A stretch of 64,000 nt of DNA from Macrostomum lignano (taxonomy: Eukaryota): contig NIVC01000297.1 in the NCBI GenBank assembly GCA_002269645.1, positions 372,001 to 436,000 on the forward strand. Reading direction: 5' to 3'. The translations under genes and the position numbers were made by a program. Under the pieces are notes generated by a model. It made no database searches. It was not told the DNA's origin and saw only the letters and a list, made by a program, of their open reading frames with translations. This document shows, one piece after another, positions 16,609-40,632 of the stretch. Each line of letters begins with the position of its first letter. The stretch's first letter is position 1.

Positions 16609-17115
16609 TCAAACAGTAGTAGTTTTCCAACGCCTCTTGCAAGCCTGACAACTCGCATAGCGCCGTCTTCTCGAAAAGGCGGGGCTAGTAAGTACAATGT
16701 AGAAAACCGCAAGGCCAGTGAAGCAGCCTAAAACGCATGTAGCAATTTTATATGGTCGAATGGCCTCGCTACAGTCATTCTGGACAGCGCCTGCGCTAGG
16801 GTTGGCTGTAGACGCAGCCACACTACTAGCAGGGGCAGTAGTAGCTGCGGACTCGACAGCCGCTTTAGATTGTTCCCAGAAATCTGCGCAAGAGGACTTA
16901 ATCAGCGGCCTGTCGCACCTGGCTGCCCAGGCTTTGCCAAAGTCGCCGCGGCAGTGGGATAAACTTGGACAGTCCTTGCAATTGCTGGCTCCCTCGCTGT
17001 CGCGATACTGGCCAAGGGGACAGGCAGGCAGGGGAACCGCCAGCATGGGCGGCACCAGCGCCAATGTTATTAAAAGTGCCAACTGCAGCTGCATGAAGGT
17101 TGGTGTGACATGCAT
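16609..17115 (-). CDS. R1: TNFR-like single-CRD type-I membrane protein
   Basis: Signal-like LALLITLALVPPMLA; CPLGQY-x8-CKDCPSLSHC-x11-C-x8-C; S/T/A stalk; TM; RRRR stop-transfer. Confidence 0.75.
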   Translation of the reverse strand: MHVTPTFMQLQLALLITLALVPPMLAVPLPACPLGQYRDSEGASNCKDCPSLSHCRGDFGKAWAARCDRPLIKSSCADFWEQSKAAVESAATTAPASSVAASTANPSAGAVQNDCSEAIRPYKIATCVLGCFTGLAVFYIVLTSPAFSRRRRYASCQACKRRWKTTTV

Positions 17116-17139
17116 TTGATGCAGACTGTCTATGAATGC

Positions 17140-17232
17140 TTTTTTCCTGTGTCTGTTTGTCATAGTTTCCGCATTAGTATCTGCCAGTCTGTCTGCCCAC
17201 CTGCCTTGTGTGTGCCTGTCTGTCTGTCTTTG

Positions 17233-17281
<49 letters not shown>

Positions 17282-17306
17282 TTGTGTCTGTCTGTCTGTC
17301 TGTCTT

Positions 17307-17372
<66 letters not shown>

Positions 17373-17412
17373 GGTCTGTCTGTTTGTTTGTGTGTCCGTC
17401 TGTCTGTCTTTG

Positions 17413-17465
<53 letters not shown>

Positions 17466-17640
17466 TTGTGTCTGTTTGTCTGTCTGTCTTTGTGTCCGTC
17501 TGTCTGTCTGCCTGCCTGCCTGCCTGTCTGTCTGCCTGCCTGCCTGCCTGCCTGCCTGTCTGTCTGTCTGTCTGTCTGTCTTTGTGTCTGTTTGTCTGTC
17601 TGTCTGTCTTTGTGTCTGTCTGTCTGTCTGTCTGTCTTTG

Positions 17641-17699
<59 letters not shown>

Positions 17700-17816
17700 G
17701 AATGCTTGTTTCCAGTGTCTCTGTCAGTCAGTCAGTCAGTCAGTCAGTCAGGCAGTCAGTCAGTCAGTCAGTCAGTCAGTCAGTCAGTCAGTCAGTCAGT
17801 CAGTCAGTCAGTCAGG

Positions 17817-17855
<39 letters not shown>

Positions 17856-18135
17856 GCAGTCAGTCAGTCAGTCAGTCAGTCAGTCAGTCAGTCAGTCAGT
17901 CAGTCAGTCAGTCAGTCAGTCAGTCAGTCAGTCAGTCAGTCAGTCAGGCAGTCAGTCAGTCAGTCAGTCAGTCAGTCAGTCAGTCAGTCAGTCAGTCAGT
18001 CAGTCAGTCAGTCAGTCAGTCAGTCAGTCAGTCAGTCAGTCAGTCAGTCAGTGTCTACCTGTCTGTATGTCTGCCTGTCTGTCTGTTTGTCGGTGACTGT
18101 CTGTCTGTCTCTGTCTGACTGTGTGTCCGTCTGTC
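17140..18135. repeat. Compound microsatellite: (TCTG)n then (TCAG)n
   Basis: Direct reading; upstream of R1. Confidence 0.97.
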
Positions 18136-18982
18136 TACTTGGTTGGCCATCTCCTATCACATAATATTTCAAAGAATACTTAGAATTTACCTTCTATAAG
18201 CATAGAAAAATAAATAACAAAAAAATATTAATTTGTCATCAGAGAAGTTTTATTTCAACGATTACGACTTGTCACAGACATCTTGTTCGAGAATATAAAT
18301 AATCAAATAAAGTAAAAATGTCAGGAAGAATTTTGACATTCAGGTTTTTCTGCAATTATCAGTTGAAATTACGGAATCACATGCTGCGTGTAAGTCGCAG
18401 ATAAACTTTGTGAAATTTGACAACGGTAAAATTCCAAATGGCAAGGAATTACATGTAAAATTAAATTAATTAATAAATTTAGCTATACTACTGCATTGAA
18501 TAACTATATCACCAAAAATGGTAGAGAGGCACTTGCTTTAGAAAGACCGAAAGGAGAATCCTAAAAATATAGGAGCCAGCCACTCATTTTGGCGCCGCAG
18601 CCAGGCTCTCATTTTGGCGCCGCAGCCAGGCGCTCATTTTGGCGCCGCAGGCACTCTATTTTGGTGCCCTGAAGTAAAATTATTGATTTCGATAACAGTT
18701 CAAAAAGTGGGACTGCCCATTCCGCTGACTCCTAAGCACACACAACCGCGCCAATATAGCTATGCCCCTAAGCGAGAACGTTACATAATCAAAAAATAAA
18801 TTATAATACAATTATCATTATCAAATTGTCAGTAGCTGTTTAAGTCGAGCAGAATCGGTGATCAGAAGCAATCCACGATAAACTGACCAGGCCAATCCGA
18901 TCCATATATTGATTTTCAATTCGTTTTATGGCGCTGAAATTTTATTCAGGGTGGGTGGGCAACGCTGTTCTGCAGTGAGACT

Positions 18983-19828
18983 CACACCCTATGGTTAACC
19001 ATAATAAGAGATGCCACACCCTGTGATTAACCACAATAGGAGATGCCACACCCTATGATTAACCACAATAGGAGATGCCACACCCTATGATTAACCATAA
19101 TAGGAGATCCCACACCCTGTGATTAACCACAATAGGAGATGCCACACCCTATGATTAACCACAATAAGAGATGCCACACCCTATGATTAACCATAATAGG
19201 AGATCCCACACCCTATGATTAACCACAATAGGAGATGCCACACCCTATGATTAACCATAATAGGAGATGCCACACCCTATGATTAACCATAATAGGAGAT
19301 GCCACACCCTATGATTAACCACAATAGGAGATGCCACACCCTATGATTAACCACAATAGGAGATGCCACACCCTATGATATTAACCACAATAGGAGATGC
19401 CACACCCTATGATTAACCACAATAGGAGATGCCACACCCTATGATTAACCACAATAGGAGATGCCACACCCTATGATTAACCACAATAGGAGATGCCACA
19501 CCCTATGATATTAACCACAATAGGAGATGCCACACCCTATGATTAACCACAATAGGAGATGCCACACCCTATGATTAACCACAATAGGAGATGCCACACC
19601 CTATGATATTAACCACAATAGGAGATGCCACACCCTATGATTAACCACAATAGGAGATGCCACACCCTATGATTAACCACAATAGGAGATGCCACACCCT
19701 ATGATTAACCACAATAGGAGATGCCACACCCTATGATTAACCACAATAGGAGATGCCACACCCTATGATTAACCACAATAGGAGATGCCACACCCTATGA
19801 TGAACCATAAAAGGAGATCCCACACCTG
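18983..19828. repeat. 32-bp minisatellite
   Basis: (gattaaccacaataggagatgccacaccctat)n. Confidence 0.97.
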
Positions 19829-19920
19829 GAGGCATACCTAAAAATCTGAGAATTTCACTGAAGAAACGTTTTCAACCACATGTATAAGACTTTCAAGGCA
19901 GTTTTAACCCAATACAAATA

Positions 19921-20496
19921 TCAACCGACCTTGCCTCGCTTACGATGACGAGCGCCACCATTTTTACCAGAATTTGGTGTCTGCCGCATAAGCAGCCCAT
20001 TCTTGTCGTCATGTCTGCCATTTTCAAAATTTCTCGTAGTTTTCGGTCTGTTCTTCATTCTATTGCAACCAAATTTATAAATTTTATGCACTGAAACCAG
20101 TAACCCAATGAGGGCAAACGGCGCAAGAATGGCTATGCCAATCTGACATTGCAGAACATGTTCGCAGTTACAATCATATGTAGCACTTGTGTTCATATCA
20201 GAGACACTGTTGAAATTATAAGACGATGAAGTTGTCTCAGCATCTCGAGTTTTCTCCCAGTATTCCTGACAGCCAGATTTAATAATCTCTTGCTCACAAT
20301 GAGCTCGCCAAAATTTATCTGTGCCGATGCACTGCTGCCAAGTTGGGCACTTATCGCATTTACCAGTCGCCTCTTTGTTATGATAGGTGCCCATTGGGCA
20401 GTTGATTGACGGCAGCGCGGCCGTGAGACATACCACTCCTGTCAACACTATAAATGACTGGATAATTTTAATCGACGACATCAGAAATTTTAGCAT
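19921..20496 (-). CDS. R2: TNFR-like single-CRD type-I membrane protein
   Basis: Signal-like N-terminus; CPMGTY..CDKCPTWQQC..FWRAHC-x8-C; TM IGIAILAPFALIGLLVSV; basic tail. Confidence 0.75.
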   Translation of the reverse strand: MLKFLMSSIKIIQSFIVLTGVVCLTAALPSINCPMGTYHNKEATGKCDKCPTWQQCIGTDKFWRAHCEQEIIKSGCQEYWEKTRDAETTSSSYNFNSVSDMNTSATYDCNCEHVLQCQIGIAILAPFALIGLLVSVHKIYKFGCNRMKNRPKTTRNFENGRHDDKNGLLMRQTPNSGKNGGARHRKRGKVG

Positions 20497-20527
20497 GATT
20501 AGTAAAAGTAACTGAAAATTATGAGGG

Positions 20528-22388
20528 TATAGATTAGCAATTCATTATATTCTGTTTTGTAACTAAAGGAATAGATTAGCAATTCATTATATTCTGTTTT
20601 GTAACTAAAGGAATAGATTAGCAATTCATTATATTCTGTTTTGTAACTAAAGGAATAGATTAGCAATTTATTCTATTCTGTTTTGTAACTAAAGGAATAG
20701 ATTAGCAATTTATTCTATTCTGTTTTGTAACTAAAGGAATAGATTAGCAATTCATTATATTCTGTTTTGTAACTAAAGGAATAGATTAGCAATTTATTCT
20801 ATTCTGTTTTGTAACTAAAGGAATAGATTAGCAATTCATTATATTCTGTTTTGTAACTAAAGGAATAGATTAGCAATTCATTATATTCTGTTTTGTAACT
20901 AAAGGAATAGATTAGCAATTCATTATATTCTGTTTTGTAACTAAAGGAATAGATTAGCAATTTATTCTATTCTGTTTTGTAACTAAAGGAATAGATTAGC
21001 AATTTATTCTATTCTGTTTTGTAACTAAAGGAATAGATTAGCAATTCATTATATTCTGTTTTGTAACTAAAGGAATAGATTAGCAATTTATTCTATTCTG
21101 TTTTGTAACTAAAGGAATAGATTAGCAATTCATTATATTCTGTTTTGTAACTAAAGGAATAGATTAGCAATTTATTCTATTCTGTTTTGTAACTAAAGGA
21201 ATAGATTAGCAATTCATTATATTCTGTTTTGTAACTAAAGGAATAGATTAGCAATTTATTCTATTCTGTTTTGTAACTAAAGGAATAGATTAGCAATTTA
21301 TTCTATTCTGTTTTGTAACTAAAGGAATAGATTAGCAATTCATTATATTCTGTTTTGTAACTAAAGGAATAGATTAGCAATTCATTATATTCTGTTTTGT
21401 AACTAAAGGAATAGATTAGCAATTCATTATATTCTGTTTTGTAACTAAAGGAATAGATTAGCAATTTATTCTATTCTGTTTTGTAACTAAAGGAATAGAT
21501 TAGCAATTCATTATATTCTGTTTTGTAACTAAAGGAATAGATTAGCAATTCATTATATTCTGTTTTGTAACTAAAGGAATAGATTAGCAATTTATTCTAT
21601 TCTGTTTTGTAACTAAAGGAATAGATTAGCAATTTATTCTATTCTGTTTTGTAACTAAAGGAATAGATTAGCAATTCATTCTATTCTGTTTTGTAACTAA
21701 AGGAATAGATTAGCAATTCATTCTATTCTGTTTTGTGTCGAAGGGAATAGATTAGCAATTCATTCTATTCTGTTTTGTATCTAAGGGAATAGATTAGCAA
21801 TTTATTCTATTCTGTTTTGTAACTAAAGGAATAGATTAGCAATTTATTCTATTCTGTTTTGTAACTAAAGGAATAGATTAGCAATTTATTCTATTCTGTT
21901 TTGTAACTAAAGGAATAGATTAGCAATTTATTCTATTCTGTTTTGTAACTAAAGGAATAGATTAGCAATTCATTCTATTCTGTTTTGTAACTAAAGGAAT
22001 AGATTAGCAATTTATTCTATTCTGTTTTGTAACTAAAGGAATAGATTAGCAATTCATTCTATTCTGTTTTGTAACTAAAGGAATAGATTAGCAATTCATT
22101 CTATTCTGTTTTGTAACTAAAGGAATAGATTAGCAATTTATTCTATTCTGTTTTGTGTCGAAGGGAATAGATTAGCAATTCATTCTATTCTGTTTTGTAT
22201 CTAAGGGAATAGATTAGCAATTCATTCTATTCTGTTTTGTAACTAAAGGAATAGATTAGCAATTCATTCTATTCTGTTTTGTGTCGAAGGGAATAGATTA
22301 GCAATTCATTCTATTCTGTTTTGTATCTAAGGGAATAGATTAGCAATTCATTCTATTCTGTTTTGTGTTTAAGGGAATAGACTAGCAA
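20528..22388. repeat. 42-bp minisatellite directly upstream of R2
   Basis: (taactaaaggaatagattagcaattcattatattctgttttg)n. Confidence 0.97.
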
Positions 22389-23185
22389 TCCACTTTATGA
22401 AAACGTTTTTTTATTATTGCTAAATGTGATAAAAGCGCTATCTTTCTAATCGTAATATCAAAAACAAGTCGGAATTTATCAAGAGTTGTAAAGCTTAGTT
22501 ATTTAAAACAAACACACAATTGCAAAAAAGGCTAAAATGAGTAATTATGTGTAGAACACAGTTTTGTAAGAAAGACAGCTGTCTACCTTTAGCTGGATAA
22601 CACAAATTGTTGATGTGCAAGCAATATAGAAACAAGGACTAGCTACTCAAGTAACATGTATATATATATATAAGGTTGTCCTTGGTATTGAAAGCTACTA
22701 AAAAATACTAAAAAATAAATATAAGATTAAATGAACGCAAAAATGCCTCATGGAATGCATTGTGTATACGAATATGTTGGTTCCAATGAGTCAAAAACAA
22801 TCAGAGAAACAACAATGCTATATAGTAGTCACGCATAAAAACATCCGTGAAAAATAATGACAGAAATTCTACAATTAAAAAATTTTTCCTTTACTAGCAG
22901 TGACAAAAATATCAGAAAAATTCAAGCAATAATAATAACTAAAATAGCCATAGTACTAGTAGTGAAACTAGCGGAAAATTGCAAGCACGGAATCTATAAT
23001 TGCAAAAAACAATTATAAATATATACTAGGATACACAAGTTAAATAATGAGTATTAAGTTGCGTTAATATTAAGCAATTGATAAACTGTTTGGCAGTCGC
23101 AATCAAAGTCAGTTAGATGGAGATTAATCCCCATCATTATAGACAGCATCTTCGGCATCTGTGGGTCCAGTCGGGTTGTCATCCG

Positions 23186-23647
23186 TCAGCAGCTGGATAC
23201 AGAGTTTTCACCTCTAATAACACAGGCTACCACGACAATAACGATCAAGCAGACCAATAAAATGACGAATAAAATCCAGACAATTGGCCAAGGATCTACT
23301 TTGCCAGCCGCACCTTCATTTGATCGTTTAGTGGTAGCATTGAATGCGTTAGAACAATTGCTCACAGCAACGCCACTGGTGTCAGAGCCGTTACCTGGCA
23401 CATTCTCAGCGGGATTAGGCGGCTGATTATTATTTTCCCAAAATTGCGAGCAAGCCAATTTAATCGACTGCCACTCGCACCTGGCTGCCCAGGCTTCGTC
23501 AGAGCGGCACTGTGAAAGGCTCGGACAGAGCCGGCAATCGTTGGCTCCAGGGTGGCGATATTTGCCAGGCGGACAGGCAGGCAGGGGATCTGCCGGCATG
23601 GGCAGCACCAGAATAAATATAGCGAGCAACCGAATTGCCTTTAGCAT
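23186..23647 (-). CDS. R3: TNFR-like membrane protein; tail cut short by an apparent 1-nt deletion
   Basis: MLKAIRLLAIFILVLP signal; CPPGKY..CRLCPSLSQC..WAARC-x8-C; TM DPWPIVWILFVILLVCLIVIVVVAC. Confidence 0.7.
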   Translation of the reverse strand: MLKAIRLLAIFILVLPMPADPLPACPPGKYRHPGANDCRLCPSLSQCRSDEAWAARCEWQSIKLACSQFWENNNQPPNPAENVPGNGSDTSGVAVSNCSNAFNATTKRSNEGAAGKVDPWPIVWILFVILLVCLIVIVVVACVIRGENSVSSC

Positions 23648-23687
23648 CTGAAATTTGATGGAGTATGTCTATGAATGCTTGTTTCAT

Positions 23688-24318
23688 GTGTCTGTCTGTC
23701 TGTCTGTGTTTCTGTCTGTCTGTCTGTCTGTGTGTCTGTCTGTGTTTCTGTTTGTCTGTCTGTGTTTCTGTTTGTCTGTCTGTGTTTCTGTTTGTCTGTA
23801 TGTCTGTCTGTGTTTCTGTTTGTCTGTCTGTCTGTCTGTGTTTCTGTTTGTCTGTATGTCTGTCTGTGTTTCTGTTTGTCTGTATGTCTGTCTGTGTTTC
23901 TGTTTGTCTGTATGTCTGTCTGTGTTTCTGTTTGTCTGTCTCTGTTTCTGTTTGTCTGTATGTCTGTCTGTGTTTCTGTTTGTCTGTCTGTGTTTCTGTT
24001 TGTCTGTATGTCTGTCTGTGTTTCTGTTTGTCTGTCTGTGTTTCTGTTTGTCTGTCTGTGTTTCTGTTTGTCTGTATGTCTGTCTGTGTTTCTGTTTGTC
24101 TGTCTGTGTTTCTGTTTGTCTGTCTGTCTGTGTGTCTGTTTGTCTGTCTGTCTGTCTGACTGTCTGTCTGTCTGTCTGCCTACCTGTCTCTCTGTCTGTC
24201 TGTCTGTCTGTCTGTCTGTGCGTCTGTGTGTGTGTGTGTGTGTCTGTCTGTCTGTCTGTCTGTGCGTCTGTGTGTGTGTGTCTGTCTGTCTGTCTGTCTG
24301 TGCGTCTGTGTGTGTGTG

Positions 24319-24353
<35 letters not shown>

Positions 24354-24368
24354 GCGTCTGTGTGTGTG

Positions 24369-24421
<53 letters not shown>

Positions 24422-24458
24422 GCCTGTCTGTCTGTCTGACTGTCTGTCTGTCTATCTA

Positions 24459-24489
<31 letters not shown>

Positions 24490-24496
24490 GTCTGCC

Positions 24497-24545
<49 letters not shown>

Positions 24546-24590
24546 GCCTGTCTGTCTGTCTGTCTGTCTGTCTGTGTCTGTCTGTCGGTC
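23688..24590. repeat. (TCTG)n/(TG)n microsatellite upstream of R3
   Basis: Direct reading. Confidence 0.97.
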
Positions 24591-25293
24591 TGCCCTTCTT
24601 CGCGCACCCTGATAGATATACTTGTTCATTATCACAGAAAACGTACCTATCTAGGAAGTTTATTTAATATTTAAAGTGCTTAACTTAATAATAACACTAT
24701 ATAAAATAGGAACACAATTCGATTAAAACTCATTACCCGATTTCTAAATTTTAAAACTGAATTGTTGCAATAACTAGTCGAATAACTAATCGACTAAGCT
24801 ATTTTATAAGCTTTTTTGTATAGAAAAAAAATTAAAGACACAATAAAACGTGATTCCAAAAAATAAAATGACAAGTACGTGTACTTTAGAATTTTGGAAT
24901 AAATATGATTAACAGCCTTCGATTTTGGTACAAGTGGAGATTTTGAAGTAAAATATTTAGACAATATTTCTTAAAATAAAAACTACTAAAAATTTTTTGT
25001 TAAAAAGATTGTTTTAGCAAGCGTGGCGAATTGTAATGCAAAAATTCTATTTTATTAAACCGGTAAAAACAGATTAGAACAAAAAATATCTATCTACCAA
25101 ATCTATAAGTGTATAAAAGTTGTTATTTCAAAAAGATTGTTAAAAAAATTGTATTGGGACGCCAGAAAATAATTCTGATTTAAGGTCCAAGCCATGCTGT
25201 TGGTACCACAATAGGTTTCTCATGGTTGCAAAGTTATTGAACCAGTCAACAAGTTCTAGCCCTCGACGGGGGTCTTATTCAATAAATTTACAG

Positions 25294-26181
25294 TTACAAC
25301 GCAGTTGTCAGGATGTCTTCCTTAGAATACGGTTGTTCTTTAATCTTAGATGACTCATAGCCGACATTCGTTTGATTATCATCAGACGGCATCAAATTTT
25401 CTAGCTCATGGCTTGGCAACTCACTATTTGAGGATGGAGTTCTCTTACGGTTTCCAGCGGAACGCTGTAGTCTGTTGGTAGACAGATTTGAAGCCTGTTT
25501 CAGTTGCTGTTGAAACTTCTGCTTTTGTTTATTGTTCTTTGACCATTTGTAGAAGAAGGCGAGGAAAGAAATTAGGATGAGCATCAGAAGGATCATTATT
25601 AGTACGCCCAAACCAATTTTTATCTTTTCGTAGACCGGAAAGGAAAAACCAGCAGGCTTATCAGTACAACCAACCGGTCTACCAGCAGAACCAACCGGTC
25701 TACCAGCAGAACCAACCGGTCTACCAGCAGAACCAACCGGTCTACCAGCAGAACCAACCGGTCTACCAGCAGAACCAACCGGTCTACCAGCAGAACCAGC
25801 CGGTCTATTAGTAGAACTAGCCGGTCTATCAGTAGAACCAGCCGGTCTATCAGTAGAACCAGGCATTTCTGTCGTGGATTGGATAGCAGCCTCTTTAGTT
25901 GGTTCAACAGAGGCGTCGCTGGTGCCAGCCATCCGCGGCTGCAGCTCATCCAAGGTGAACTTGCAGTATTCACGAACATGGCTCCGTCTGCACTCATGTC
26001 CTACAGTGGGATTGCTGCGACACCGGTCAAGGCTAGGACAGCGCTTGCAGTCATGGGTGCTCATGTCAGGGTATTCGCCTGGCTGACACTTTGGAGGCCA
26101 ATTACCCATGGTTCTGGCTTCTGGGTTGACGGACAACCATAACAGTACAATCATAGCTAGAGAAAGCAAAATTGCCTTCAT
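25294..26181 (-). CDS. R4: TNFR-like membrane protein with a 7-aa repeat stalk
   Basis: MKAILLSLAMIVLLWLS signal; CQPGEY..CKRCPSLDRC-x9-C-x8-C; (GSAGRPV)n stalk; TM; about 80-aa tail. Confidence 0.8.
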   Translation of the reverse strand: MKAILLSLAMIVLLWLSVNPEARTMGNWPPKCQPGEYPDMSTHDCKRCPSLDRCRSNPTVGHECRRSHVREYCKFTLDELQPRMAGTSDASVEPTKEAAIQSTTEMPGSTDRPAGSTDRPASSTNRPAGSAGRPVGSAGRPVGSAGRPVGSAGRPVGSAGRPVGSAGRPVGCTDKPAGFSFPVYEKIKIGLGVLIMILLMLILISFLAFFYKWSKNNKQKQKFQQQLKQASNLSTNRLQRSAGNRKRTPSSNSELPSHELENLMPSDDNQTNVGYESSKIKEQPYSKEDILTTAL

Positions 26182-26429
26182 GTTTGTTTGTTTGCATGCA
26201 AATAAAAGAAGAAATGCTTTCATTAGTTTGAAGTGATGTTTCTTGGAAAAAATTCCTAAAAGCTTTGCGCAAAATACACTGGCTATAGAAATTCCTTTTC
26301 TTTCAGCAAAAATAGCACCACTTTCTATTTTCACTTTCAGGTATGACTTGCCTGTCTTATTGTCACTAAAACCTATTTTGCTAACCAATTACTAGCAATA
26401 GTAAAAATCGTGTGCATTTTTACCTGCAC

Positions 26430-28847: not shown

Positions 28848-28984
28848 ATTTGCTTGCTGGCATGCAAATCAAAGAAGAAATGCTTGCATTATAGTGTGAA
28901 CTGATGTTTCTTGGAACATCTCTAAAAGCTTGACGCAAAATGCACTAGCTACACAAATTATTTTTCTTTTAGCAAAAAAGAACA

Positions 28985-30716: not shown

Positions 30717-31486
30717 TTATTTGGATAGAGATTCTTTGTCAACACCATCGGTATCTGTGGGGCCAGCTGTCTGCTCGTCCTTCGTCAGTAACTGGCTGAA
30801 AGAATTTTCGCCTTTAATAAACTTGCATTGCTTGTCTGCACTGGATTCAACTGCAGGTCGAGCATTTTTGCACAGTTTGTAAATAACACACGATAGGACG
30901 GCAATAGCGATTAAGGAAATGAATAAAAGGACAGCTAAAACGATTGTCCAAGGATCTACTCTGCTATCCTGGCAGGCTGCACCATTCTTTGATCCTTCGG
31001 TGGTATTGGGTTGCAGAGATTCTGCAGAGCTAGAATTATTGCTCACAGCAACACCACCAATGTCCGAGCTGCTACCTGGCGCATTCTCAGCGAGATTTGG
31101 CGCTTCAGTCACTGATTTACCAATTAGTGATGAGGCGTTTCTTCTTCGCCAGGAATCTGATGGACAGTTGCACTTGCAATCACATGCGGCACCTGTATTC
31201 ACATCAGAGGCATTGCCTGGCAGCTTGGCGCTACTGTTGAAATTATGAGCTGATGAAGCCGTCTCAGCATCTCGAGACTGGTTCCAAAATTCCTGACAGC
31301 CAGCTCTAATAATCTCCTGCTCGCACTGAGCTCGCCAAAATTTATGTTCTCCGATGCACTGCTGCCATGTTGGGCATTTATCACAGTTGTCAGTAGCGCC
31401 CTTATTGTGATAGGTGCCCAGTGGGCAGTTTTTTGACGGCAGCCCGGCAGTGAGACATGGCATGCCTGAATTATTTTTAACGACAT
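30717..31486 (-). CDS. R6: TNFR-like membrane protein with a frameshifted signal peptide (possible pseudogene)
   Basis: CRD closely matches R2; stalk/TM/tail closely match R9. The ATG homologous to R2 (31486) is out of frame; an in-frame ATG lies at 31463. Confidence 0.6.
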
Positions 31487-31894
31487 CTTGATCTGTAGCA
31501 AGATTGGTGAAGTCACTGAAATTATATGTAGAATTGAATAGATTAGCAATCCATTCTATTCTGCTTTGTATCAAAGGGAATAGATTAGCAATCCACTCCA
31601 TCAAACGTTTTTATTATTGCTAAATCATGTGCTATATTTCTAAGCAATAAAACAAAAACAAATCGGACTTTATCGAGTTGGAAAGCTTAGTTATTTAAAA
31701 CAAAGGCACACAAACGCACGGATTGAAAAACAGGTTAAAATGAGTAATTATGTGTATCAAACTGTTGGTAAGAAGGACAACTGTCTAACTTCAGCTGGAT
31801 ATAGCAAGTAGTTAATCGATAGACTTTAAAAGTACTAAAGTAAGACAAAAATATGAATAAACGATTGAATGAGCTTTGGTGAAGGTCAGTAAGA

Positions 31895-31895: not shown

Positions 31896-31969
<74 letters not shown>

Positions 31970-31970
31970 G

Positions 31971-32041
<71 letters not shown>

Positions 32042-32042
32042 G

Positions 32043-32077
<35 letters not shown>

Positions 32078-32260
32078 GTGTGTGTGTGTGTCTGTCTGTC
32101 TGTCTGTCTGTGTGTCTGTCTGTCTGTCTGTGTGTGTGTGTCTGTCTGTGTGTCTGTCTGTCTGTCTGTCTATCTGTCTGTCTGTCTGTTTGTGTGTGTG
32201 TGTGTGTCTGTCTGTCTGTCTGTCTGTCTGTGTGTCTGTCTGTCTGTCTGTCTGTGTGTG

Positions 32261-32299
<39 letters not shown>

Positions 32300-32350
32300 G
32301 TGTGTGTGTGTGTGTGTCTGTCTGTCTGTCTGTGTGTGTGTGTGTGTGTG

Positions 32351-32389
<39 letters not shown>

Positions 32390-32406
32390 GTGTGTGTGTG
32401 TGTGTG

Positions 32407-32441
<35 letters not shown>

Positions 32442-32450
32442 GTGTGTGTG

Positions 32451-32493
<43 letters not shown>

Positions 32494-32536
32494 GTGTCTG
32501 TGTGTCTGTCTGTCTGTCTGTCTGTCTGTGTGTGTG

Positions 32537-32567
<31 letters not shown>

Positions 32568-32592
32568 GTGTCTGTGTGTCTGTGTGTGTGTG

Positions 32593-32689
<97 letters not shown>

Positions 32690-33826: not shown

Positions 33827-34324
33827 TCAATTGCGAACATATTTATAAAGTTTGTGCAATAAAAACCCTGGCCCGATGATGGCAAGGATGGCGATGGCAA
33901 TCTGATATGGCAGAACATTTTCACAGTTGCAATCACATGCGACACCCGTAGTCATATCAGAGGCATCGCCAGCTAGTTTGGCGCTACTGTTGGAAGCCGT
34001 CCCAGCAGCTCGAGTGATGGCATTCATGCTTTGCAGAGACTCGCCCGCTTCTGCAGAGCCAGAATTACTGCTCACAGCAACATCACTGATGTCGGAGCTG
34101 CTACCTGACGACCAATAATCTGAGCAAGCGGACTTAATCAACGGCCTGTCGCACCTGGCTGCCCAGGCTCTGCCAAAGTCGCCGCGGCACTTCGATAAAC
34201 TTGGGCAGTCCTTGCAATTGCTGGCTCCCTCGCTGTCCCGATACTGGCCAGGGGGGCAGGCAGGCAGGGGAGCCGCCAGCATGGGCGACACCAGCGCCAA
34301 TGTTGTTGAAAGCGCCAGATGCAT
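33827..34324 (-). CDS. R7: TNFR-like membrane protein with a premature stop after the TM
   Basis: CRD nearly identical to R1; TM like R2; TGA at 33827-33829 where R2 has AGA, and an R2-like tail continues in frame past it. Confidence 0.7.
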   Translation of the reverse strand: MHLALSTTLALVSPMLAAPLPACPPGQYRDSEGASNCKDCPSLSKCRGDFGRAWAARCDRPLIKSACSDYWSSGSSSDISDVAVSSNSGSAEAGESLQSMNAITRAAGTASNSSAKLAGDASDMTTGVACDCNCENVLPYQIAIAILAIIGPGFLLHKLYKYVRN

Positions 34325-34374
34325 TGCGGTGGGTGGCTAAAATTTGATGGAGACTGTCTATGAATGCTTGTTTC

Positions 34375-34398
34375 CTGTGTCTGTCTGTCTGTCTTTCC

Positions 34399-34490
<92 letters not shown>

Positions 34491-34496
34491 TCTTAG

Positions 34497-34533
<37 letters not shown>

Positions 34534-34562
34534 TCTTATTGTCTGTCTGTCTGTCTTCTTAG

Positions 34563-34595
<33 letters not shown>

Positions 34596-34624
34596 TCTTA
34601 TTGTCTGTCTGTCTGTCTTCTTAG

Positions 34625-34665
<41 letters not shown>

Positions 34666-34671
34666 TCTTAG

Positions 34672-34752
<81 letters not shown>

Positions 34753-34781
34753 TCTTAGTGTCTGTCTGTCTGTCTTCTTAG

Positions 34782-34814
<33 letters not shown>

Positions 34815-34843
34815 TCTTATTGTCTGTCTGTCTGTCTTCTTAG

Positions 34844-34884
<41 letters not shown>

Positions 34885-34913
34885 TCTTAGTGTCTGTCTG
34901 TCTGTCTTCTTAG

Positions 34914-34970
<57 letters not shown>

Positions 34971-35062
34971 TCTTAGTGTCTGTCTGTCTGTCTTCTTAGT
35001 GTCTGTCTGTCTGTCTGTCTGTCTGTCTTCTTAGTGTCTGTCTGTCTGTCTGTCTGTCTGTC
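34375..35062. repeat. (TCTG)n with tcttagtg interruptions, upstream of R7
   Basis: Direct reading. Confidence 0.97.
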
Positions 35063-36470: not shown

Positions 36471-36662
36471 TGAACTAGTAGCAGACAACTAACCTCATCT
36501 CACCCCTGTTCCACCTCAGCACCACAGGTCTGGTGCAGGGCTCAGCGGAGCTACGGGACAGCCAATCTGCATTTTGCAATTTCAAGTTGGGCTCGCACGA
36601 GCACTTCAATTATTTTACATTATTTAGTCTGTCTGGGCGATTTTACTGAAATTTGTTAAAAC

Positions 36663-38002
36663 TTAATTGCACGAACTTTTAGAATGACCATTAGCGGTTT
36701 TTGATGCTGAAATGTTTTTAAACATAACAAACAGGAATAAAACGCCAGCGATCGTCCAAGAAATAGATCTTTTTATCAATGCAGCTCCATCATTTTTTTG
36801 AGTCGTAACTTCATTTTTCCAAAAATCTGCGCAAGCAGACTTAATGGAAGCCCTGTCACACCTGGCTTCCCAGGCTTTGCAAGAGTCGCCGCGGCGGGTC
36901 GCCATCATAAGCGCGCACCGGCACAAGCGCGCCTGTGTATTTTATGTCAAAGTCTGGCACAGGCGCGCAGAGACATAAGCGCGCACGTTTTGACTTGCAC
37001 AAGAGCGCGGTAGAAAGTGCTCAGCATTGGCATAAGCGCGCACCATCACAAGACCGCACTGACATAAGCGCGCTGTCAGAGTTTGGCACAAGCGCGCACT
37101 TCTGGCTTTGTGTTGCAAAAGCGCGCAGTCAAGTTGCTCCATCGTCTGTCACAAAGTAGTCGATTGTATTTGTACGAATGAAATCGAATTGAAATCCTTT
37201 CGACCAGAAGATATTAGGCACGGTTCTGAATGTAGCCTGACTCAGACGACTCAGCATGTCAGGGTGAGCAAAGATGAGTCCATGGCCGTCATCAGCAGAT
37301 GATACACCACCCTGAATAATGATGACACTGTTGACACACCTGAAGCGGTCTGGAGCATCGCATATTGCTGCATACGCGTCGACAGCTGCTTTTGGAAGAG
37401 GTGGCAGCAGGCGTCTTCTTTGTCGATACATCGACGACTCCACTTCAGCAAATCCAATCCGATTGCCGACGGAGCTTGCCTGTGTCTCTCGGTCGAACAG
37501 ATCACGAAGGAATGAACTGCTCTCACCGGCCTTCCGCTTCAAATTGGCTCATAGCCGAAGTATTTCCTTCTCCTTTGAATCACCGTCGTGGTTGTGCGCG
37601 ATGAGTCTCAGCACACCATCCTTCTCGACGGCGCGTCCCGGACAGTTCTTGTTAGTGCAGCGATAGCTGACTGTCCCATTTCTAACTCTATCTTTCCGAT
37701 AAATGCAGACGCCGTGCGTATAGACTACTGAGCCGATTCTTTCCCCTTCGATTGGCTCCATTGTGTTTCAAACACTCCAACTGCGACTGAGACAGAGGTT
37801 GTCTTATTTATCTAAGTCGCAGTATCTATCGACAGTGTACATGCTTACAATTGTGCTGGCATTGGCACTGCGCTGGACTGGGGCAATTCTTGCAATCCAT
37901 AGCGCCCTCTTTGTCGCGGTAGTGGCCAGGCGGACAGGCAGGCAGTGGACCTGCCAGCCTCGGCAGCACCAGCGCCAGTGTGACTAATATTGCCAACCGC
38001 AT
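36663..38002 (-). pseudogene. R8: TNFR-like paralog split by a roughly 970-bp insertion
   Basis: 5' part MRLAILVTLALVLPRLAGPLPACPPGHYRDKEGAMDCKNCP (38002 to about 37864); 3' part RGDSCKAWEARCDRASIKSACADFW..TM (36895-36663). Confidence 0.75.
36896..37863 (-). mobile_element. Truncated Mutator-like (MULE) element with a FLYWCH-type transposase N-terminus
   Basis: YRC-x4-C..HNH Zn finger (37761-37549); in-frame TGA; then LPPLP and LIFA..TFRTVP..F motifs; repeated AAGCGCGC subterminal motifs at 36908-37130. Confidence 0.7.
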
Positions 38003-39272
38003 GGCGTTTTACTCGTATATCTGAAATTGTATGGAGAATGTTATCAATGCTTGCTTCCTGTGTCTGCCTGTCCGTCCGTGTCTGTTTGTCTGTCTGTCTG
38101 TCTGTCATTTTTCCACGCCCGCTAAGAATTATCTTCAGCTTCCTGCACTAATGTCAAAATATAATTCTGGTAGAGTAGCTCGCATTAAAGATTTCCCACA
38201 TTTCTATATAGTTGATTTAAAATTTGAAGGTCAGTCGAATTGAATAAATAAACACATCACGAATGATAGTAAATGAAAAATATGGTTGCTGTTCATGCAG
38301 GACTAGATAGATATATTTGTTCATTATTGATAAGTAATAATTTTTTGCAATACTTGTTTTCAGAGTATGAATTATTCAAAACACTATCAATTGTAAAACA
38401 GTAAACAAAAAGTCGTTGGTGTCAGATGTGTCAAAAAATGGGAATGACATCATAAGGCAGTTGCACACAGAAAACGTAGTTATTTAAATCTTTGAAGTGC
38501 TTAACTTTAATAATAATATCGTAGGTAATTGTTAGTAAGAATTTTGATTAAAATGTATTACTTATTCACTAAATATGCTACTTTATATCATTTATTTTAC
38601 GCAGAAAAAAACAATAAAGACACAAAGGAGGTTATATACCGTACTAATTAAAAGATAACTACATAGTGAATTGCACTAGTGAATTGACTAGTGAATTGCA
38701 GGCACGACAACCTCTTTATAGTTTTAGAATAAAAATATAATTGAAAGTATTTGAGGGAATAGATTATATTAGCAATCCATTCTATCAAGCAATTTCTTCT
38801 TGCTAAAATCATGTAATAAAAGTGCTATTAGGATATATTTCTAAGCAATAAAACAAAAATAAGTCGGATTTTATCAAGAGTTGGAAAGCCTAGTTATTTA
38901 AAACAAAGGCACACAAACTTACGGATTGCAAAGCAGGTTAAAATGAGTAATATTGTGTAGTAAACTGTCGGTAAGAAAGACAACTGTCTAACTTCAGCTG
39001 GATATAGCAAATTCAATAAAAGATTCAATGAGTTTTGCAAATAGCGCCAGTAAGAAGCCATAGACTAAAATGCCAGTTATGGGAATGCATTTTATAATAC
39101 GAGCTACAAATTTCAATGTGCAAATTTTCGGTAGCTAGTTCCAGTGTATCAAAAAGCAATCATAAAAATAACAATGCTATATAGTAATCAGACATCAGAA
39201 AATTCGGAGCAAATGATGACAAATTCCACATTTTAAAATTCTCCTTTACTCACAGTAGTAATTATGTAAATA

Positions 39273-39417
39273 ATAAACGCCGTTTAATTCACATTCTGTG
39301 GTTAGAATGTCCGAGGCTGCGTTTAATGGTCTCGAGGCGAGCGTAGCGAGCCGAGGACCATTGATTGTAGCCGAGGATATTCTAACCATAGACTATGATG
39401 AATTAAACGGCGTTTAT
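39273..39417. mobile_element. MITE-like palindromic element
   Basis: 19-bp perfect inverted ends ataaacgccgtttaattca / tgaattaaacggcgtttat, with inner inverted arms. Confidence 0.6.
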
Positions 39418-39825
39418 CATATATTAAATTCGATTGCTCCTGATTTCGAGGAGATTATATGATATAATATCCTAGTTTTTGTTAAAAATTACCACAGACA
39501 ACACATTCCCGGCTCAGAATAGTACAATTTTTTAACGATTAAATAAGCAATCGTATTTTATATTAAAAAACTTCAAGCAGGAAAATTATAACTGAAATGA
39601 CTAACTGCACTACTCATAGTAAAAATGTAAGGAATTACGCTTATGTAAATTCGGGGCAAGCAAAACAATAATCATTAACATTGCCATGTTACTTACTAAC
39701 AGAAATAATATCGGTAAATTGCAAACAAAAAATCCATAATAGCTAAAAAGAATCCTAAATATATATATATATTAGCAAGCAATAGTTAAAATAATTGATA
39801 AAATGTTAGGCTGTCACAATCAAAG

Positions 39826-40632
39826 TTAGCTGGATTGAGATTCTTCGCCATCAATAAAGACAGCGGAATCATCGGCATCTGTATGGGCAGCTGTCTGCTC
39901 GTCCTTGGTCAGCAACTGGCTTACACAACTTTCGCCTTTATTAAACTTGCATTGCCTGTCTGCACTGGATTTAACTGCAGTGCGAGCATTTTTGCACTGT
40001 TTGTAAATAACACAGGATAGGACGATCACGCAGACCAATAAAAGTACAGCTAAAACCCAGACGATTGGCCAAGGATCTACTTTGTCAGCCGCATCATTAT
40101 TTGATCCTTCAGTGGTGGTATTAGGTTGCAGAGATTCTTTACAGCTAGACTTATTGTTCACAGCAACACCACTGATGTCGGAGCCGCTACGTGACGCATT
40201 CTCAGCGAGATTTGGCGCCTCAGTCACTGATTTACCAATTAGTGATGATGTGTTGCTTCTTGGCCAGGAATCTGAGGGACAGTTGCAGTTACACGCGACA
40301 CCAGTGTTCACATGAGATGCATTGCCAGGCTGCTTGGCGCTACTGTTGGAATTATGAGATGATGAAGCCGTCTCAGCATCTCGCGAGCCAGCCAAAGTGG
40401 AACAGTTGGGAAGACGACACACGCCTCGATTCCAGAGTTGTTGGCACTTCCAGCCCCAAAATTTCTCCATCAATCGGTGCGCTTGACTGCAGTCGAAGCA
40501 CACGCGTGGACAGTGACTATTCTGTTTAGCGTTGTTGTTCCAGTACGTAGGAACAGTCGGCACTCGGGCTTGGCAGAAGGCGACCAACTGTGCAGCGACA
40601 ATGCATTCATATGCGTAGCTTATGATACGCAT
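39826..40632 (-). CDS. R9: membrane protein with a divergent Cys domain on an R6-type stalk/TM/tail
   Basis: Signal-like N-terminus; C-x3-C-x2-C-x14-C-x8-C-x4-C; SRDAETASS...DPWPIVWVL... closely matches R6. Confidence 0.75.
   Translation of the reverse strand: MRIISYAYECIVAAQLVAFCQARVPTVPTYWNNNAKQNSHCPRVCFDCSQAHRLMEKFWGWKCQQLWNRGVCRLPNCSTLAGSRDAETASSSHNSNSSAKQPGNASHVNTGVACNCNCPSDSWPRSNTSSLIGKSVTEAPNLAENASRSGSDISGVAVNNKSSCKESLQPNTTTEGSNNDAADKVDPWPIVWVLAVLLLVCVIVLSCVIYKQCKNARTAVKSSADRQCKFNKGESCVSQLLTKDEQTAAHTDADDSAVFIDGEESQSS

What the first reader, a model, noticed from the sequence alone, without database searches (positions are those of the whole stretch)
16609..40632. Combinatorial shuffling of ectodomain, stalk and TM/tail modules among the receptor paralogs
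Seen: R7 joins an R1-type CRD (GQYRDSEGASNCKDCPSLS) to R6-type stalk pieces (GSSSDIS.VAVS, SAKL.G.ASD) and an R2-type TM/tail. R6 joins an R2-type CRD (CDKCPTWQQCIG..KFWRA.CEQEII) to an R9-type stalk/TM/tail. R3 joins an R1-like CRD to an R6/R9-type PN.AEN.PG and DPWPIVW TM. Short junction motifs (RDAETxSS, CDCNC, GxxSDxSxVAVS) recur at the switch points. Inference: recombination or gene conversion reassorts binding and signalling modules, as in diversified immune-receptor clusters.
Basis: partly seen in the sequence, partly recalled or inferred. Interest (0 to 1): 0.85.

Follow-up and report, generated by a model that had tools for sequence, protein, structure and literature searches.

The report
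Recombining flatworm membrane-protein gene cluster
A tandem cluster of nine small, flatworm-specific membrane-protein genes in Macrostomum lignano really is a patchwork in which head, stalk and tail segments have been swapped between neighbouring copies by unequal recombination, which is a well-known way for gene families to evolve, here in an uncharacterised family.

Summary
The mosaic is real. All nine ORFs (R1–R9) lie on the minus strand at 16.6–40.6 kb. R7 is R1-like in its signal peptide, cysteine-rich domain (CRD) and 5' flank (89% nt, dS 0.20). It is R2-like in its TM, tail and 3' flank (78–81%, dS 0.22–0.24). The reciprocal comparisons are saturated. R3 joins a type-I CRD to the R6/R9-type stalk and TM. 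R2 and R6 share a CRD and first stalk segment, then diverge after CDCNC. All four CRD-type × TM-type combinations exist, so at least one recombination is required.

The genome is Macrostomum lignano Mlig_3_7. Its other subgenome copies (C298, C40) carry the same mosaics, so these are not assembly chimeras. C298 also holds a fresh recombinant, R3x. It is 98–100% identical to R3y up to the TM codons and R6-like afterwards (AU p = 7e-42). It bounds a 10-kb indel that contains two extra genes.

Two corrections apply. R6 is not itself a hybrid, because R10 has the same architecture at a uniform 82–85%. The "junction motifs" are conserved parts of the two stalk modules.

The "binding/signalling, immune-like" reading is untested. 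The tails have no known domain and dN/dS near 1, and the family has no homologues elsewhere. This is a new member of a known kind.

The parts
16609..17094 (-). R1. Signal peptide, type-I CRD, diverged A-like stalk, TM-b-like TM, and a tail ending in TTV. The ORF is open upstream to 17163.
   Evidence: Copies are on C40 (91% aa), C4025 (85%) and C3409 (degenerate).
19921..20496 (-). R2. Type-II CRD, stalk A (lacking SAKLAGNG) and TM-b/tail-b. The CRD and A part (20206-20586) is R6/R10-like. The TM, tail and 3' flank (19749-20206) are R7-like.
23186..23647 (-). R3. Type-I CRD, stalk B and TM-a, with an internally deleted and prematurely stopped tail-a. The CRD and 5' flank (23448-24423) are R7/R1-like. 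The B stalk and TM (23216-23424) are R9/R10/R6-like.
25294..26223 (-). R4. Type-IV CRD, a coding 21-bp repeat stalk (25668-25861), a TM and a long tail ending in TAL.
   Evidence: 85% nt identical to R5 in the CRD.
27783..28847 (-). R5. Type-IV CRD, a 15.5-copy 21-bp coding repeat stalk (28183-28508), a TM and a long tail ending in TEV.
   Evidence: The annotated protein PAA86029.1 carries far fewer repeat copies.
30717..31601 (-). R6. Type-II CRD, stalk A, a linker, stalk B and TM-a/tail-a. The hydrophobic signal peptide seen in R2 and R10 is replaced by a non-hydrophobic N-terminus.
   Evidence: A 99% identical copy is on C298.
33827..34324 (-). R7, the clearest mosaic. CRD 34117-34324 (R1-like), B piece 34049-34110 (R6/R9-like), A piece 33924-33995 (R6-like), and TM-b, tail and 3' flank 33496-33965 (R2-like).
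   Evidence: An identical protein is on C298.
36663..38002 (-). R8. A type-I CRD gene split inside the CRD (5' half 37865-38002, 3' half 36663-36896) by a 968-bp insert (36897-37864) that carries a FLYWCH zinc-finger ORF. Probably a pseudogene.
   Evidence: The same insert is in both C298 copies.
39826..40632 (-). R9. Degenerate type-II CRD, then stalk A, linker, stalk B and TM-a/tail-a. Homology to R6 starts at RDAET (40386) and runs 266 nt past the stop, to 39560.
17216..18136 (.). (CTGT)n microsatellite immediately 5' of R1.
18983..19826 (.). 32-bp tandem array between R2 and R1.
20529..22389 (.). 42-bp tandem array (44 copies) 5' of R2. Single units of it also lie 5' of R6, R10 and R2y.
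23689..24592 (.). (TGTC)n microsatellite 5' of R3. Collinearity with C298 switches from the R3x flank to the R3y flank inside it.
26427..26943 (.). 32-bp tandem array 5' of R4. A related array lies at 28982-29550, 5' of R5.
31896..32689 (.). (GTCT)n microsatellite 5' of R6.
34378..35062 (.). (TGTC)n microsatellite 5' of R7.

Best explanation
The region is a lineage-specific tandem cluster in the flatworm Macrostomum lignano. It encodes small single-pass type-I membrane glycoproteins. Each has a signal peptide, one 6-cysteine domain (CRD), a Ser/Asn-rich stalk, a TM and a short tail. The cluster evolves by birth-and-death, and misaligned recombination between same-strand neighbours is frequent. 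That recombination includes unequal crossing-over or NAHR that joins the 5' half and flank of one gene to the 3' half and flank of another, and shorter gene-conversion patches.

Three apparently unmixed lineages can be recognised.
- R1 type: CRD-I, A'-stalk, TM-b'.
- R2 type: CRD-II, stalk A, TM-b.
- R3 type: CRD-I, stalk B, TM-a.

The R6/R9/R10 clade (CRD-II, A, linker, B, TM-a) and R7 (CRD-I, B, A, TM-b) are recombinant architectures. The surviving breakpoints sit at module borders: after the CRD's final Trp, after CDCNC and at VDPW. I infer that this is because only in-frame products that keep the domains intact persist.

Shown here: the discordant histories, the breakpoints, the replication of the mosaics on other subgenome copies, a recent recombinant, the structural polymorphism, and purifying selection on the CRD.

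Inferred: the order and number of the old events, any promoting role of the flanking tandem arrays, and any receptor function.
For: Discordant divergence within single genes.
- Module identities: R7-R1 is 89% in the CRD and 34% in TM-b. R7-R2 is 49% in the CRD and 78% in TM-b (R7-R2y 48% and 81%). R3-R1 is 69-72% in the CRD and R3-R6 is 46%. R3-R6/R9/R10 is 74-77% in stalk B.
- Synonymous divergence: R7-R1 CRD dS is 0.20 and R7-R2 CRD dS is 1.7. R7-R2 TM-b dS is 0.22-0.24 and R7-R1 TM-b is saturated. R3-R1 CRD dS is 0.59 and R3-R6/R10 CRD is saturated. R3-R6/R9/R10 stalk B dS is 0.19-0.39.
- ML trees separate CRD types I, II and IV at 100/100. They give (R2,R2y,R7)|(R1s) in TM-b at 100/100 and (R6,R7,R9,R10)|(R3s) in stalk B at 100/100.
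- Forcing the R3 CRD to group with R6/R10 costs 80 lnL (p-AU 2e-4).
- All four combinations exist: (I,b) = R1 and R7, (II,b) = R2, (II,a) = R6 and R10, (I,a) = R3.
- Permutation tests gave 0 of 100,000.

Extent of the exchanged units.
- Homology runs into both flanks. R7 is R1/R3-like for 740 nt upstream and R2-like for 330 nt downstream.

Recent event.
- R3x is 98-100% identical to R3y from about 700 nt upstream to CDS nt 360. It is then 80% R6-like for 700 nt. An (R3x,R3y) sister relationship is rejected in the 3' part (delta lnL 141, p-AU 7e-42).
- R3x and R3y bound a 10-kb block (R10 and R8y) that is absent from the window and from C40.
- A 5-kb block, from the R9 flank through R8 to the region upstream of R7, is duplicated in C298 at 89-97%.

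Not an artefact.
- The same mosaics are on C298 (R6, R7, R9) and C40 (R1, R2, R3).
- The assembly holds about three subgenome copies of most loci (PMC10733133).

Selection.
- CRD dN/dS is 0.2-0.6.
Against: - The old events cannot be ordered or counted. For three-lineage comparisons (R1s, R2s, R7) unrooted topology tests are uninformative, so the case rests on distances and dS, not on topology.
- Alignments across non-homologous modules inflate the permutation statistics.
- Some differences are plain indels, not exchanges: R2 lacks SAKLAGNG, the R3 tail has an internal deletion, and R10 lacks the linker.
- The link between tandem arrays and breakpoints is only circumstantial. Alignments break at variable arrays anyway, and 15% of this genome is simple or tandem repeat (PMC5730564).
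- No reads were available to check the assembly directly.
Confidence: 0.87

Rival explanations
1. The mosaic copies are assembly chimeras. In this view the Canu/PacBio assembly of a polyploid genome spliced reads from different paralogs together.
For: Mlig_3_7 is a draft of a neopolyploid. Only about 64% of its bases are error-free by REAPR, and 93% of read pairs map to multiple loci. The window's contig matches C40 on its left part and C298 on its right part.
Against: - R7 and R6 recur on C298 at 100% and 99% protein identity. R1, R2 and R3 recur on C40 at 89-96% with the same architecture. R3 and R2 recur again on C298.
- The junctions lie within genes of 500 bp or less, which is much shorter than a PacBio read.
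- The window differs from both C40 (85-94%) and C298 (95-98.6%) where they overlap, so it is not a splice of the two.
- The joined segments are 70-89% diverged from their donors, not identical to them.
Confidence: 0.02
2. There was no recombination. In this view one long ancestral architecture was differently trimmed by deletions in each copy, and very uneven substitution rates produced the apparent module types.
For: Several differences are indeed simple indels: R2 lacks SAKLAGNG, the R3 and R3y tails have an internal deletion, R10 lacks the linker, and R9's CRD lacks about 12 residues. R1's stalk and TM look like a very diverged A plus TM-b. The R6 pattern needs no exchange of its own.
Against: - Synonymous divergence differs from 0.2 to saturation between adjacent segments of the same small gene, and in opposite directions for different partners.
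- All four CRD x TM combinations occur.
- R7 carries B before A, whereas R6, R9 and R10 carry A before B.
- R3x switches from 100% to about 68-80% identity with R3y at one point.
Confidence: 0.05
3. Classical exon shuffling. In this view the modules were once separate exons, were recombined through introns or moved by transposable elements, and the introns were later lost.
For: Switch points coincide with domain borders. TE fragments lie in the cluster: a FLYWCH-bearing insert in R8 and a mariner-like ORF at 36108-36458.
Against: All intact genes are single uninterrupted ORFs. Exchanged segments carry their flanking intergenic DNA with them, as expected for crossovers between whole tandem units. 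No TE ends flank any module. The R8 insert has no in-frame GT-AG.
Confidence: 0.04

Closest known systems
Sea-urchin Sp185/333 (SpTransformer) gene clusters
   Same: Both have small genes packed a few kb apart. In both, the sequences are mosaics of shared 'elements' in different combinations. Genes and flanks are bounded by microsatellites, segmental duplications and deletions differ between haplotypes, and pseudogenes are present. Recombination or gene conversion is inferred as the diversifier (PMC3091723; PMC5103432, listed).
   Different: There is no sequence relationship. Sp185/333 proteins are secreted, lack a cysteine-rich domain and TM, number about 50 genes, and are induced by immune challenge. 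Here there are about 10 genes per haplotype, they are membrane-anchored, and their expression and function are unknown.
Vertebrate immune-receptor clusters shaped by unequal crossing-over, such as KIR/LILR and Ly49 (comparison from general knowledge)
   Same: Both are tandem same-orientation paralogs. In both, hybrid genes join the ectodomain of one gene to the stalk, TM and tail of a neighbour, haplotypes differ in gene content, and a birth-and-death process leaves pseudogenes.
   Different: Those families have Ig or lectin domains, multi-exon genes with breakpoints in introns, and tails with defined ITIM or adaptor-binding motifs. Here the genes are intronless, the breakpoints are inside the ORF, and no signalling motif was found.
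TNFR-type, GCC2_GCC3 and ephrin-receptor-like cysteine-rich repeats (PF00020, PF07699)
   Same: The first half of the CRD (C-P-x-G-x-Y-x6-8-C-x2-C-P) matches the generic repeat. Pfam Ephrin_rec_like scores 20.6-22.6 bits in R1, R2 and R7 and 14.7 in R6. A profile search hits multi-repeat proteins, mostly over profile positions about 4-25. Hits to TNFRSF10A and the CaSR cysteine-rich domain are below threshold.
   Different: All scores are below the curated cut-offs. The second half of the domain (C-x8-11-C-x8-C-x2-[FY]W in types I and II) is found only in this genome. There is a single domain per protein, not a repeat array. No death domain or TRAF motif is present.

Membership tests
TNF-receptor superfamily | TNFR_c6 cysteine-rich domain at or above the Pfam gathering score | tested here: not met
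   PF00020 scores 10.5-17.3 bits against a cut-off of 29.4 in R1, R3 and R7. There is no hit in the others.
TNF-receptor superfamily | Elongated three-disulfide A/B-module fold | tested here: inconclusive
   The AlphaFold2 model of the CRD, built with a 10-sequence alignment, has mean pLDDT 61.8. Foldseek against PDB gave no match with E <= 0.001. A PDB profile search gave a best E of 0.18.
TNF-receptor superfamily | Cytoplasmic death domain or TRAF-binding motif | tested here: not met
   No Pfam domain was found in any tail. I read the tails by eye and saw no (P/S/A/T)x(Q/E)E motif.
GCC2_GCC3 / Ephrin_rec_like (PF07699) | Full-length match to the 48-position profile above the cut-off of 23.1 bits | tested here: not met
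   Scores are 22.6, 22.4, 20.6 and 14.7 bits, and only profile positions about 12-34 are covered. The match is just below threshold and partial.
Pacifastin inhibitor (UniRef label of A0A1I8JGC1, a fused R3y/R2y gene model) | Match to the pacifastin domain profile | tested here: not met
   No Pacifastin_I hit appeared at E <= 1 in any of the eight window proteins. The C298 fused gene model itself was not scanned.
Recombining tandem multigene family (birth-and-death with NAHR or gene conversion) | Tandem paralogs in the same orientation | tested here: met
   Nine genes on the minus strand, spaced about 2.5-3.5 kb apart.
Recombining tandem multigene family (birth-and-death with NAHR or gene conversion) | Adjacent segments of one gene have different closest relatives and different synonymous divergence | tested here: met
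Recombining tandem multigene family (birth-and-death with NAHR or gene conversion) | A recent exchange tract with an abrupt end | tested here: met
   R3x and R3y are 98-100% identical for about 1 kb. After that point R3x is 68-80% identical to R3y and groups with R6. p-AU is 7e-42.
Recombining tandem multigene family (birth-and-death with NAHR or gene conversion) | Gene-content polymorphism between haplotypes or subgenome copies, and pseudogenes | tested here: met
   C298 has 11 genes, including R10, R8y and R3x. The window has 9. C40 has 4 plus a fragment. Damaged copies include R8 (insert), R3x (stop codon), R2z (frame break) and R6 (no signal peptide).
   No expression data were found. The tails have no recognised domain and evolve at dN/dS of about 0.4-1.5.

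The most novel reading that the evidence does not exclude
The cluster could be a flatworm-specific, hypervariable cell-surface recognition system. In this reading a constrained 6-cysteine binding head is continually re-paired with different stalks and anchors by array-flanked cassette exchange. Gene content would differ between the three subgenomes and probably between individuals. It might serve in pathogen recognition, allorecognition or gamete and partner recognition in this hermaphrodite. It would parallel the sea-urchin Sp185/333 system but be unrelated to it.
Probability: 0.1. Interest if true: 0.7.

Novelty: new member of a known kind. Interest (0 to 1): 0.36.

Why it matters
The cluster is a compact, well-resolved example of how unequal recombination between tandem intronless genes builds new domain combinations. 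It shows old events (dS about 0.2-0.6), one very recent recombinant and an associated 10-kb presence/absence variant. It lies in a neopolyploid flatworm that can be studied by RNAi and transgenesis.

The genes are annotated only as hypothetical proteins and have no homologues in about 1.8 billion representative proteins. They are therefore a candidate lineage-specific surface-protein family whose biology is unknown.

The evolutionary mechanism itself is textbook, and nothing yet shows an immune or signalling role.

Tried and rejected
- AU tests that forced R7 with R1 or with R2 in six-taxon sets, and R3x with the R3 group, gave no discrimination. With only three lineages the constrained and free trees have the same unrooted topology. 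I replaced them with a proper (R3x,R3y) sister constraint and with dS comparisons.
- I tested whether the R6/R9 linker (PSDSW...LIGKSV) is a frameshifted remnant of TM-b. Local alignment scores were no better than shuffles, so I rejected the idea.
- I tested whether the R8 interruption is an intron. There is no in-frame GT...AG, and the insert carries a FLYWCH ORF, so it is treated as a TE insertion.
- The AlphaFold2 model of the CRD has low confidence (pLDDT 62). Foldseek and PDB profile searches were uninformative.
- The search for homologous proteins with R7 returned only proteins from the same genome.
- The R5 whole-genome search was swamped by its low-complexity repeat.
- Searching papers and two sets of supplements for the gene IDs Mlig004480, Mlig028920 and Mlig014694 to find expression data returned nothing.
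- The look-up of encoding contigs returned no record for P0004.
- Global-alignment similarity plots failed for R6, R9 and R10 against R7, because the stalk modules are in the opposite order. I used local blastn instead.

Full report
**What is there**

The window is G000:C297:372001-436000 of a 764,410,778-bp, 5269-contig genome. That equals the Macrostomum lignano Mlig_3_7 assembly (764,424,962 bp, 5270 scaffolds; PMC5730564) minus one scaffold of 14,184 bp. The size suggests the mitochondrial genome, but that is my recollection and was not checked. The identification is confirmed by exact look-up. Cluster proteins are NCBI PAA85994.1, PAA86029.1, PAA85995.1 and PAA92744.1, each a 'hypothetical protein BOX15_Mlig... 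[Macrostomum lignano]'.

Nine ORFs lie between 16.6 and 40.6 kb, all on the minus strand and 2.5-3.5 kb apart. Each encodes a signal peptide, one domain with six invariant cysteines plus invariant G, Y and P (alignment A1), a Ser/Asn/Ala-rich stalk with N-x-S/T sites, one TM and a short tail. Tandem arrays lie 5' of most of the genes. R1, R3, R6 and R7 have (GTCT)n arrays of 0.7-0.9 kb. R2 has a 42-bp array. R4 and R5 have 32-bp arrays.

The cluster sits next to a PARG gene (44.9-50.2 kb) and a PLP-dependent enzyme gene (55.7-56.2 kb).

**Modules**

A protein alignment that includes the copies found elsewhere in the genome resolves these modules.

| Module | Members or defining sequence |
|---|---|
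| CRD type I | R1, R7, R8, R3 |
| CRD type II | R2, R6, R10 |
| Degenerate type II CRD | R9 |
| CRD type IV | R4, R5 |
| Stalk A | QSRDAET...NSSAKL.GNASD.NTG.ACDCNC |
| Stalk B | PN.AEN.PG.SSDISGVAVSN...ESLQPNTTEGS.NGAA |
| TM-a / tail-a | KVDPWPIVW...GENS..QLLTKDEQTAGPTD |
| TM-b / tail-b | CE.VL.YQIAIAILA... |

The architectures are as follows.

| Gene | Architecture |
|---|---|
| R1 | I, diverged A-like stalk, diverged TM-b-like TM |
| R2 | II, A, TM-b |
| R3 | I, B, TM-a |
| R6, R10 | II, A, linker (absent in R10), B, TM-a |
| R9 | degenerate II, A, linker, B, TM-a |
| R7 | I, B (part), A, TM-b |

**Checking the observation**

Positions below are relative to each gene's ATG.

- R7 from -739 to +208 matches R1 at 81.1%. 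The same region matches the R3 copies at 78-81%.
- R7 215-276 matches R6 at 88.7% and R9 at 83.9%.
- R7 330-401 matches R6 at 84.7%.
- R7 360-829, which runs 330 nt past the stop codon, matches R2 at 72.7%.
- R6 187-1019 matches R9 at 78.4%.
- R6 -131 to +231 matches R2 at 76.2%.
- R3 224-407 matches R9 and R10 at 76-77%.

Codon-aligned module identities:

| Pair | CRD | TM-b |
|---|---|---|
| R7-R1 | 89% | 34% |
| R7-R2 | 49% | 78% |
| R7-R2y | 48% | 81% |

For R3, the CRD is 69-72% identical to R1 and 46% to R6. Its stalk B is 74-77% identical to R6, R9 and R10, and its TM-a is 71-80%.

**Is it recombination?**

Synonymous divergence should be roughly uniform along a 500-bp gene that has a single history. 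It is not.

| Comparison | dS |
|---|---|
| R7-R1, CRD | 0.20 |
| R7-R2, CRD | 1.7 |
| R7-R2/R2y, TM-b | 0.22-0.24 |
| R7-R1, TM-b | saturated |
| R3-R1, CRD | 0.59 |
| R3-R6/R10, CRD | saturated |
| R3-R6/R9/R10, stalk B | 0.19-0.39 |

R1 and R2 are saturated against each other in both modules. They therefore look like two unmixed lineages.

Further evidence:

- ML trees separate CRD types I, II and IV at 100/100. They place R7 with R2 and R2y in TM-b at 100/100, and with R6, R9 and R10 in stalk B at 100/100.
- Forcing the R3 CRD to join R6 and R10 costs 80 lnL (p-AU 2e-4).
- All four CRD x TM combinations exist: I/b, II/b, II/a and I/a. This needs at least one exchange.
- 3SEQ-style permutation of informative sites gave 0 of 100,000 for R7, R3 and R2. 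These numbers are descriptive, because non-homologous modules cannot be aligned meaningfully.
- The exchanged units include several hundred bases of flank on both sides. This points to crossovers between whole tandem units, not only short conversion tracts.
- Nucleotide alignments put the R7 junctions directly after the CRD's ...DYW codons. There R7 goes straight into the B core and skips the 36 nt that encode NQPPNPAEN.
- R7 carries an almost complete A module. Its 'TRAAGT' is a mutated RDAET, and it has a 15-nt deletion.
- R7 has B before A, whereas R6, R9 and R10 have A before B. The simplest origin is a crossover between the middle of B in a CRD-I/B gene and the start of A in a CRD/A/TM-b gene. 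The differing affinities of its parts (R1, R6, R2) suggest more than one event.

1. R6 is not itself a hybrid. R10 on C298 has the same architecture and is 82-85% identical to R6 in the CRD, A, B and TM-a alike. R6, R9 and R10 are about equidistant from one another in A, B and TM-a. R9's CRD keeps KFW...C...C but has lost about 12 residues. The discordance with R2 (shared CRD-II and A, different 3' end after CDCNC) therefore dates to the base of the R6/R9/R10 clade.
2. RDAET, CDCNC and GxxSDxSxVAVS are the start and end of module A and the core of module B. They are conserved module parts, not recombination signals.
3. The position 20206 in R2, which looked like a common breakpoint in blastn, is only the site of an in-frame deletion (SAKLAGNG) relative to R2y.

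**Not an assembly artefact, and still ongoing**

The family is confined to C297, C298, C40, C4025 and C3409. Mlig_3_7 contains about three subgenome copies of most loci, at about 2.2% SNP divergence and with many indels (PMC10733133).

Collinearity with the window:

| Contig | Window interval matched | Identity | Notes |
|---|---|---|---|
| C298 | 23.9-41.2 kb | 95-98.6% | Carries R9, R8, R7, R6, R5 and R4 with the same mosaics |
| C40 | 5.4-26.9 kb | 85-94% | Carries R1, R2 (frame-broken), R3, R4 and an R9 fragment |

C298 has an extra block. Its gene order is R4 - R3x - R10 - R8y - R3y - R2y, where the window and C40 have R4 - R3 - R2.

- R3x is 98-100% identical to R3y from about 700 nt upstream to CDS nt 360, at the VDPW codons. 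Identity then drops abruptly.
- Over the next 700 nt, R3x is 80% identical to R6 and 68% to R3y. An (R3x,R3y) sister relationship is rejected there with delta lnL 141 and p-AU 7e-42.
- R3x also has a stop codon in its TM.
- The two identical tracts of about 1 kb are direct repeats that bound the 10-kb indel. This is the classic substrate or footprint of NAHR.
- C298 also contains a 5-kb block duplication, from the R9 3' flank through R8 to the region upstream of R7. It matches the stretch from the R10 3' flank through R8y to the region upstream of R3y at 89-97%. The adjacent R9 and R10 coding sequences are only 84% identical.
- R2 and R2y are 92-97% identical up to nt 420. Beyond that they are only 55-85% identical. 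In part of that stretch R2 is closer to R7 than to R2y.

**What the proteins are**

- Pfam gives only sub-threshold hits. Ephrin_rec_like scores up to 22.6 bits against a cut-off of 23.1, over about 22 of 48 positions. TNFR_c6 scores up to 17.3 against 29.4.
- A profile of the CRD searched against 1.84 billion representative proteins found full-length matches only to proteins of this genome. All other hits cover only the N-terminal part of the profile, mostly positions about 4-25, which is the generic C-x2-G-x-Y...C-x2-C repeat.
- The structure prediction had low confidence, and fold and PDB searches found nothing.
- CRD dN/dS is 0.2-0.6. Stalks, TMs and tails run at 0.3-1.6 on small counts. 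The head is therefore constrained, and the rest is close to neutral or diversifying.
- The tails carry no recognised domain. R1, R4 and R5 end in T-x-V or T-x-L, a possible class-I PDZ ligand. I saw this by eye and it is weak evidence.
- Several copies look damaged. R8 is split by a FLYWCH-bearing insert in all three copies. R6 lacks a hydrophobic signal peptide. R3 has a truncated tail. R2z and R3x are broken.

**Comparison and verdict**

Mechanistically this is a birth-and-death tandem family reshaped by unequal crossing-over and gene conversion. The closest described parallel is the sea-urchin Sp185/333 cluster, which also has small clustered genes, mosaic element patterns, and duplications bounded by microsatellites (PMC3091723). 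There is no sequence relationship to it.

Membership of the TNFR, GCC2_GCC3 or pacifastin families is not established.

The recombination inference is supported. The 'binding plus signalling, immune-like' reading remains speculation.

Noticed in passing
window 42904-44979: A 2.1-kb (ACAG)n microsatellite (519 copies) lies between two PARG coding blocks: PARG_cat_N at 49176-50186 and PARG_cat_C at 44890-45759. It is open in frame, so naive ORF calling produces 700-950-aa 'CLSVCLSV...' proteins fused to the PARG C-terminal exon.
   Followed up: partly
window 36897-37864 (also C298:160.8-161.7 kb and 179.9-180.9 kb): A 968-bp insert inside the R8 CRD carries a FLYWCH zinc-finger ORF (PF04500, 23.8 bits) followed by a 139-aa ORF with no family match. 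It is present in all three R8 copies, so the insertion predates the block duplication. A mariner-like transposase remnant lies next to it at 36108-36458. That identification is by eye, from the HDNA...PYSPD motif, and Pfam gave no hit.
   Followed up: partly
window 28183-28508 and 25668-25861: The stalks of R5 and R4 are coding 21-bp tandem repeats (15.5 and 9.2 copies). The NCBI protein for R5 on this same contig (PAA86029.1, 273 aa) carries far fewer repeat units than the 354-aa genomic ORF. Either repeat copy number varies, or a collapsed transcript was used for the annotation.
   Followed up: partly
C298:170-192 kb (loci L028-L030): UniRef A0A1I8JGC1 ('Pacifastin domain-containing protein') is a gene model that splices pieces of R3y and R2y together. 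Its family label is not reproduced by Pfam. It is a likely annotation artefact from an older assembly.
   Followed up: partly
window 12848-13569 and 14142-15868: Large 23-bp and 35-bp tandem arrays lie just outside the cluster. They are shared with C40 and C4025. C4025 is 99.3% identical to window 9.8-13.5 kb but only about 88% identical across R1, so divergence between copies rises sharply on entering the cluster.
   Followed up: partly
C298:192.9-205 kb (loci L030-L031): A long higher-order tandem array follows R2y, where R1 would be expected. Its blocks are 97-99% identical, with offsets of about 0.63 kb and 5.8 kb. No R1 copy was found on C298.
   Followed up: no
window 41166-64000: The PARG and PLP-enzyme side of the window has no counterpart in the 32 kb of C298 that adjoin its cluster copy (C298:125001-157573). 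C40 loses collinearity after R4. The cluster therefore sits at a point where the subgenome copies are rearranged relative to one another.
   Followed up: partly
window 1-2000: This 2-kb stretch is 61.6% GC with a strong AT skew (-0.25). It is the highest 2-kb GC value in the window, where the other 2-kb windows range from 29% to 55%.
   Followed up: no
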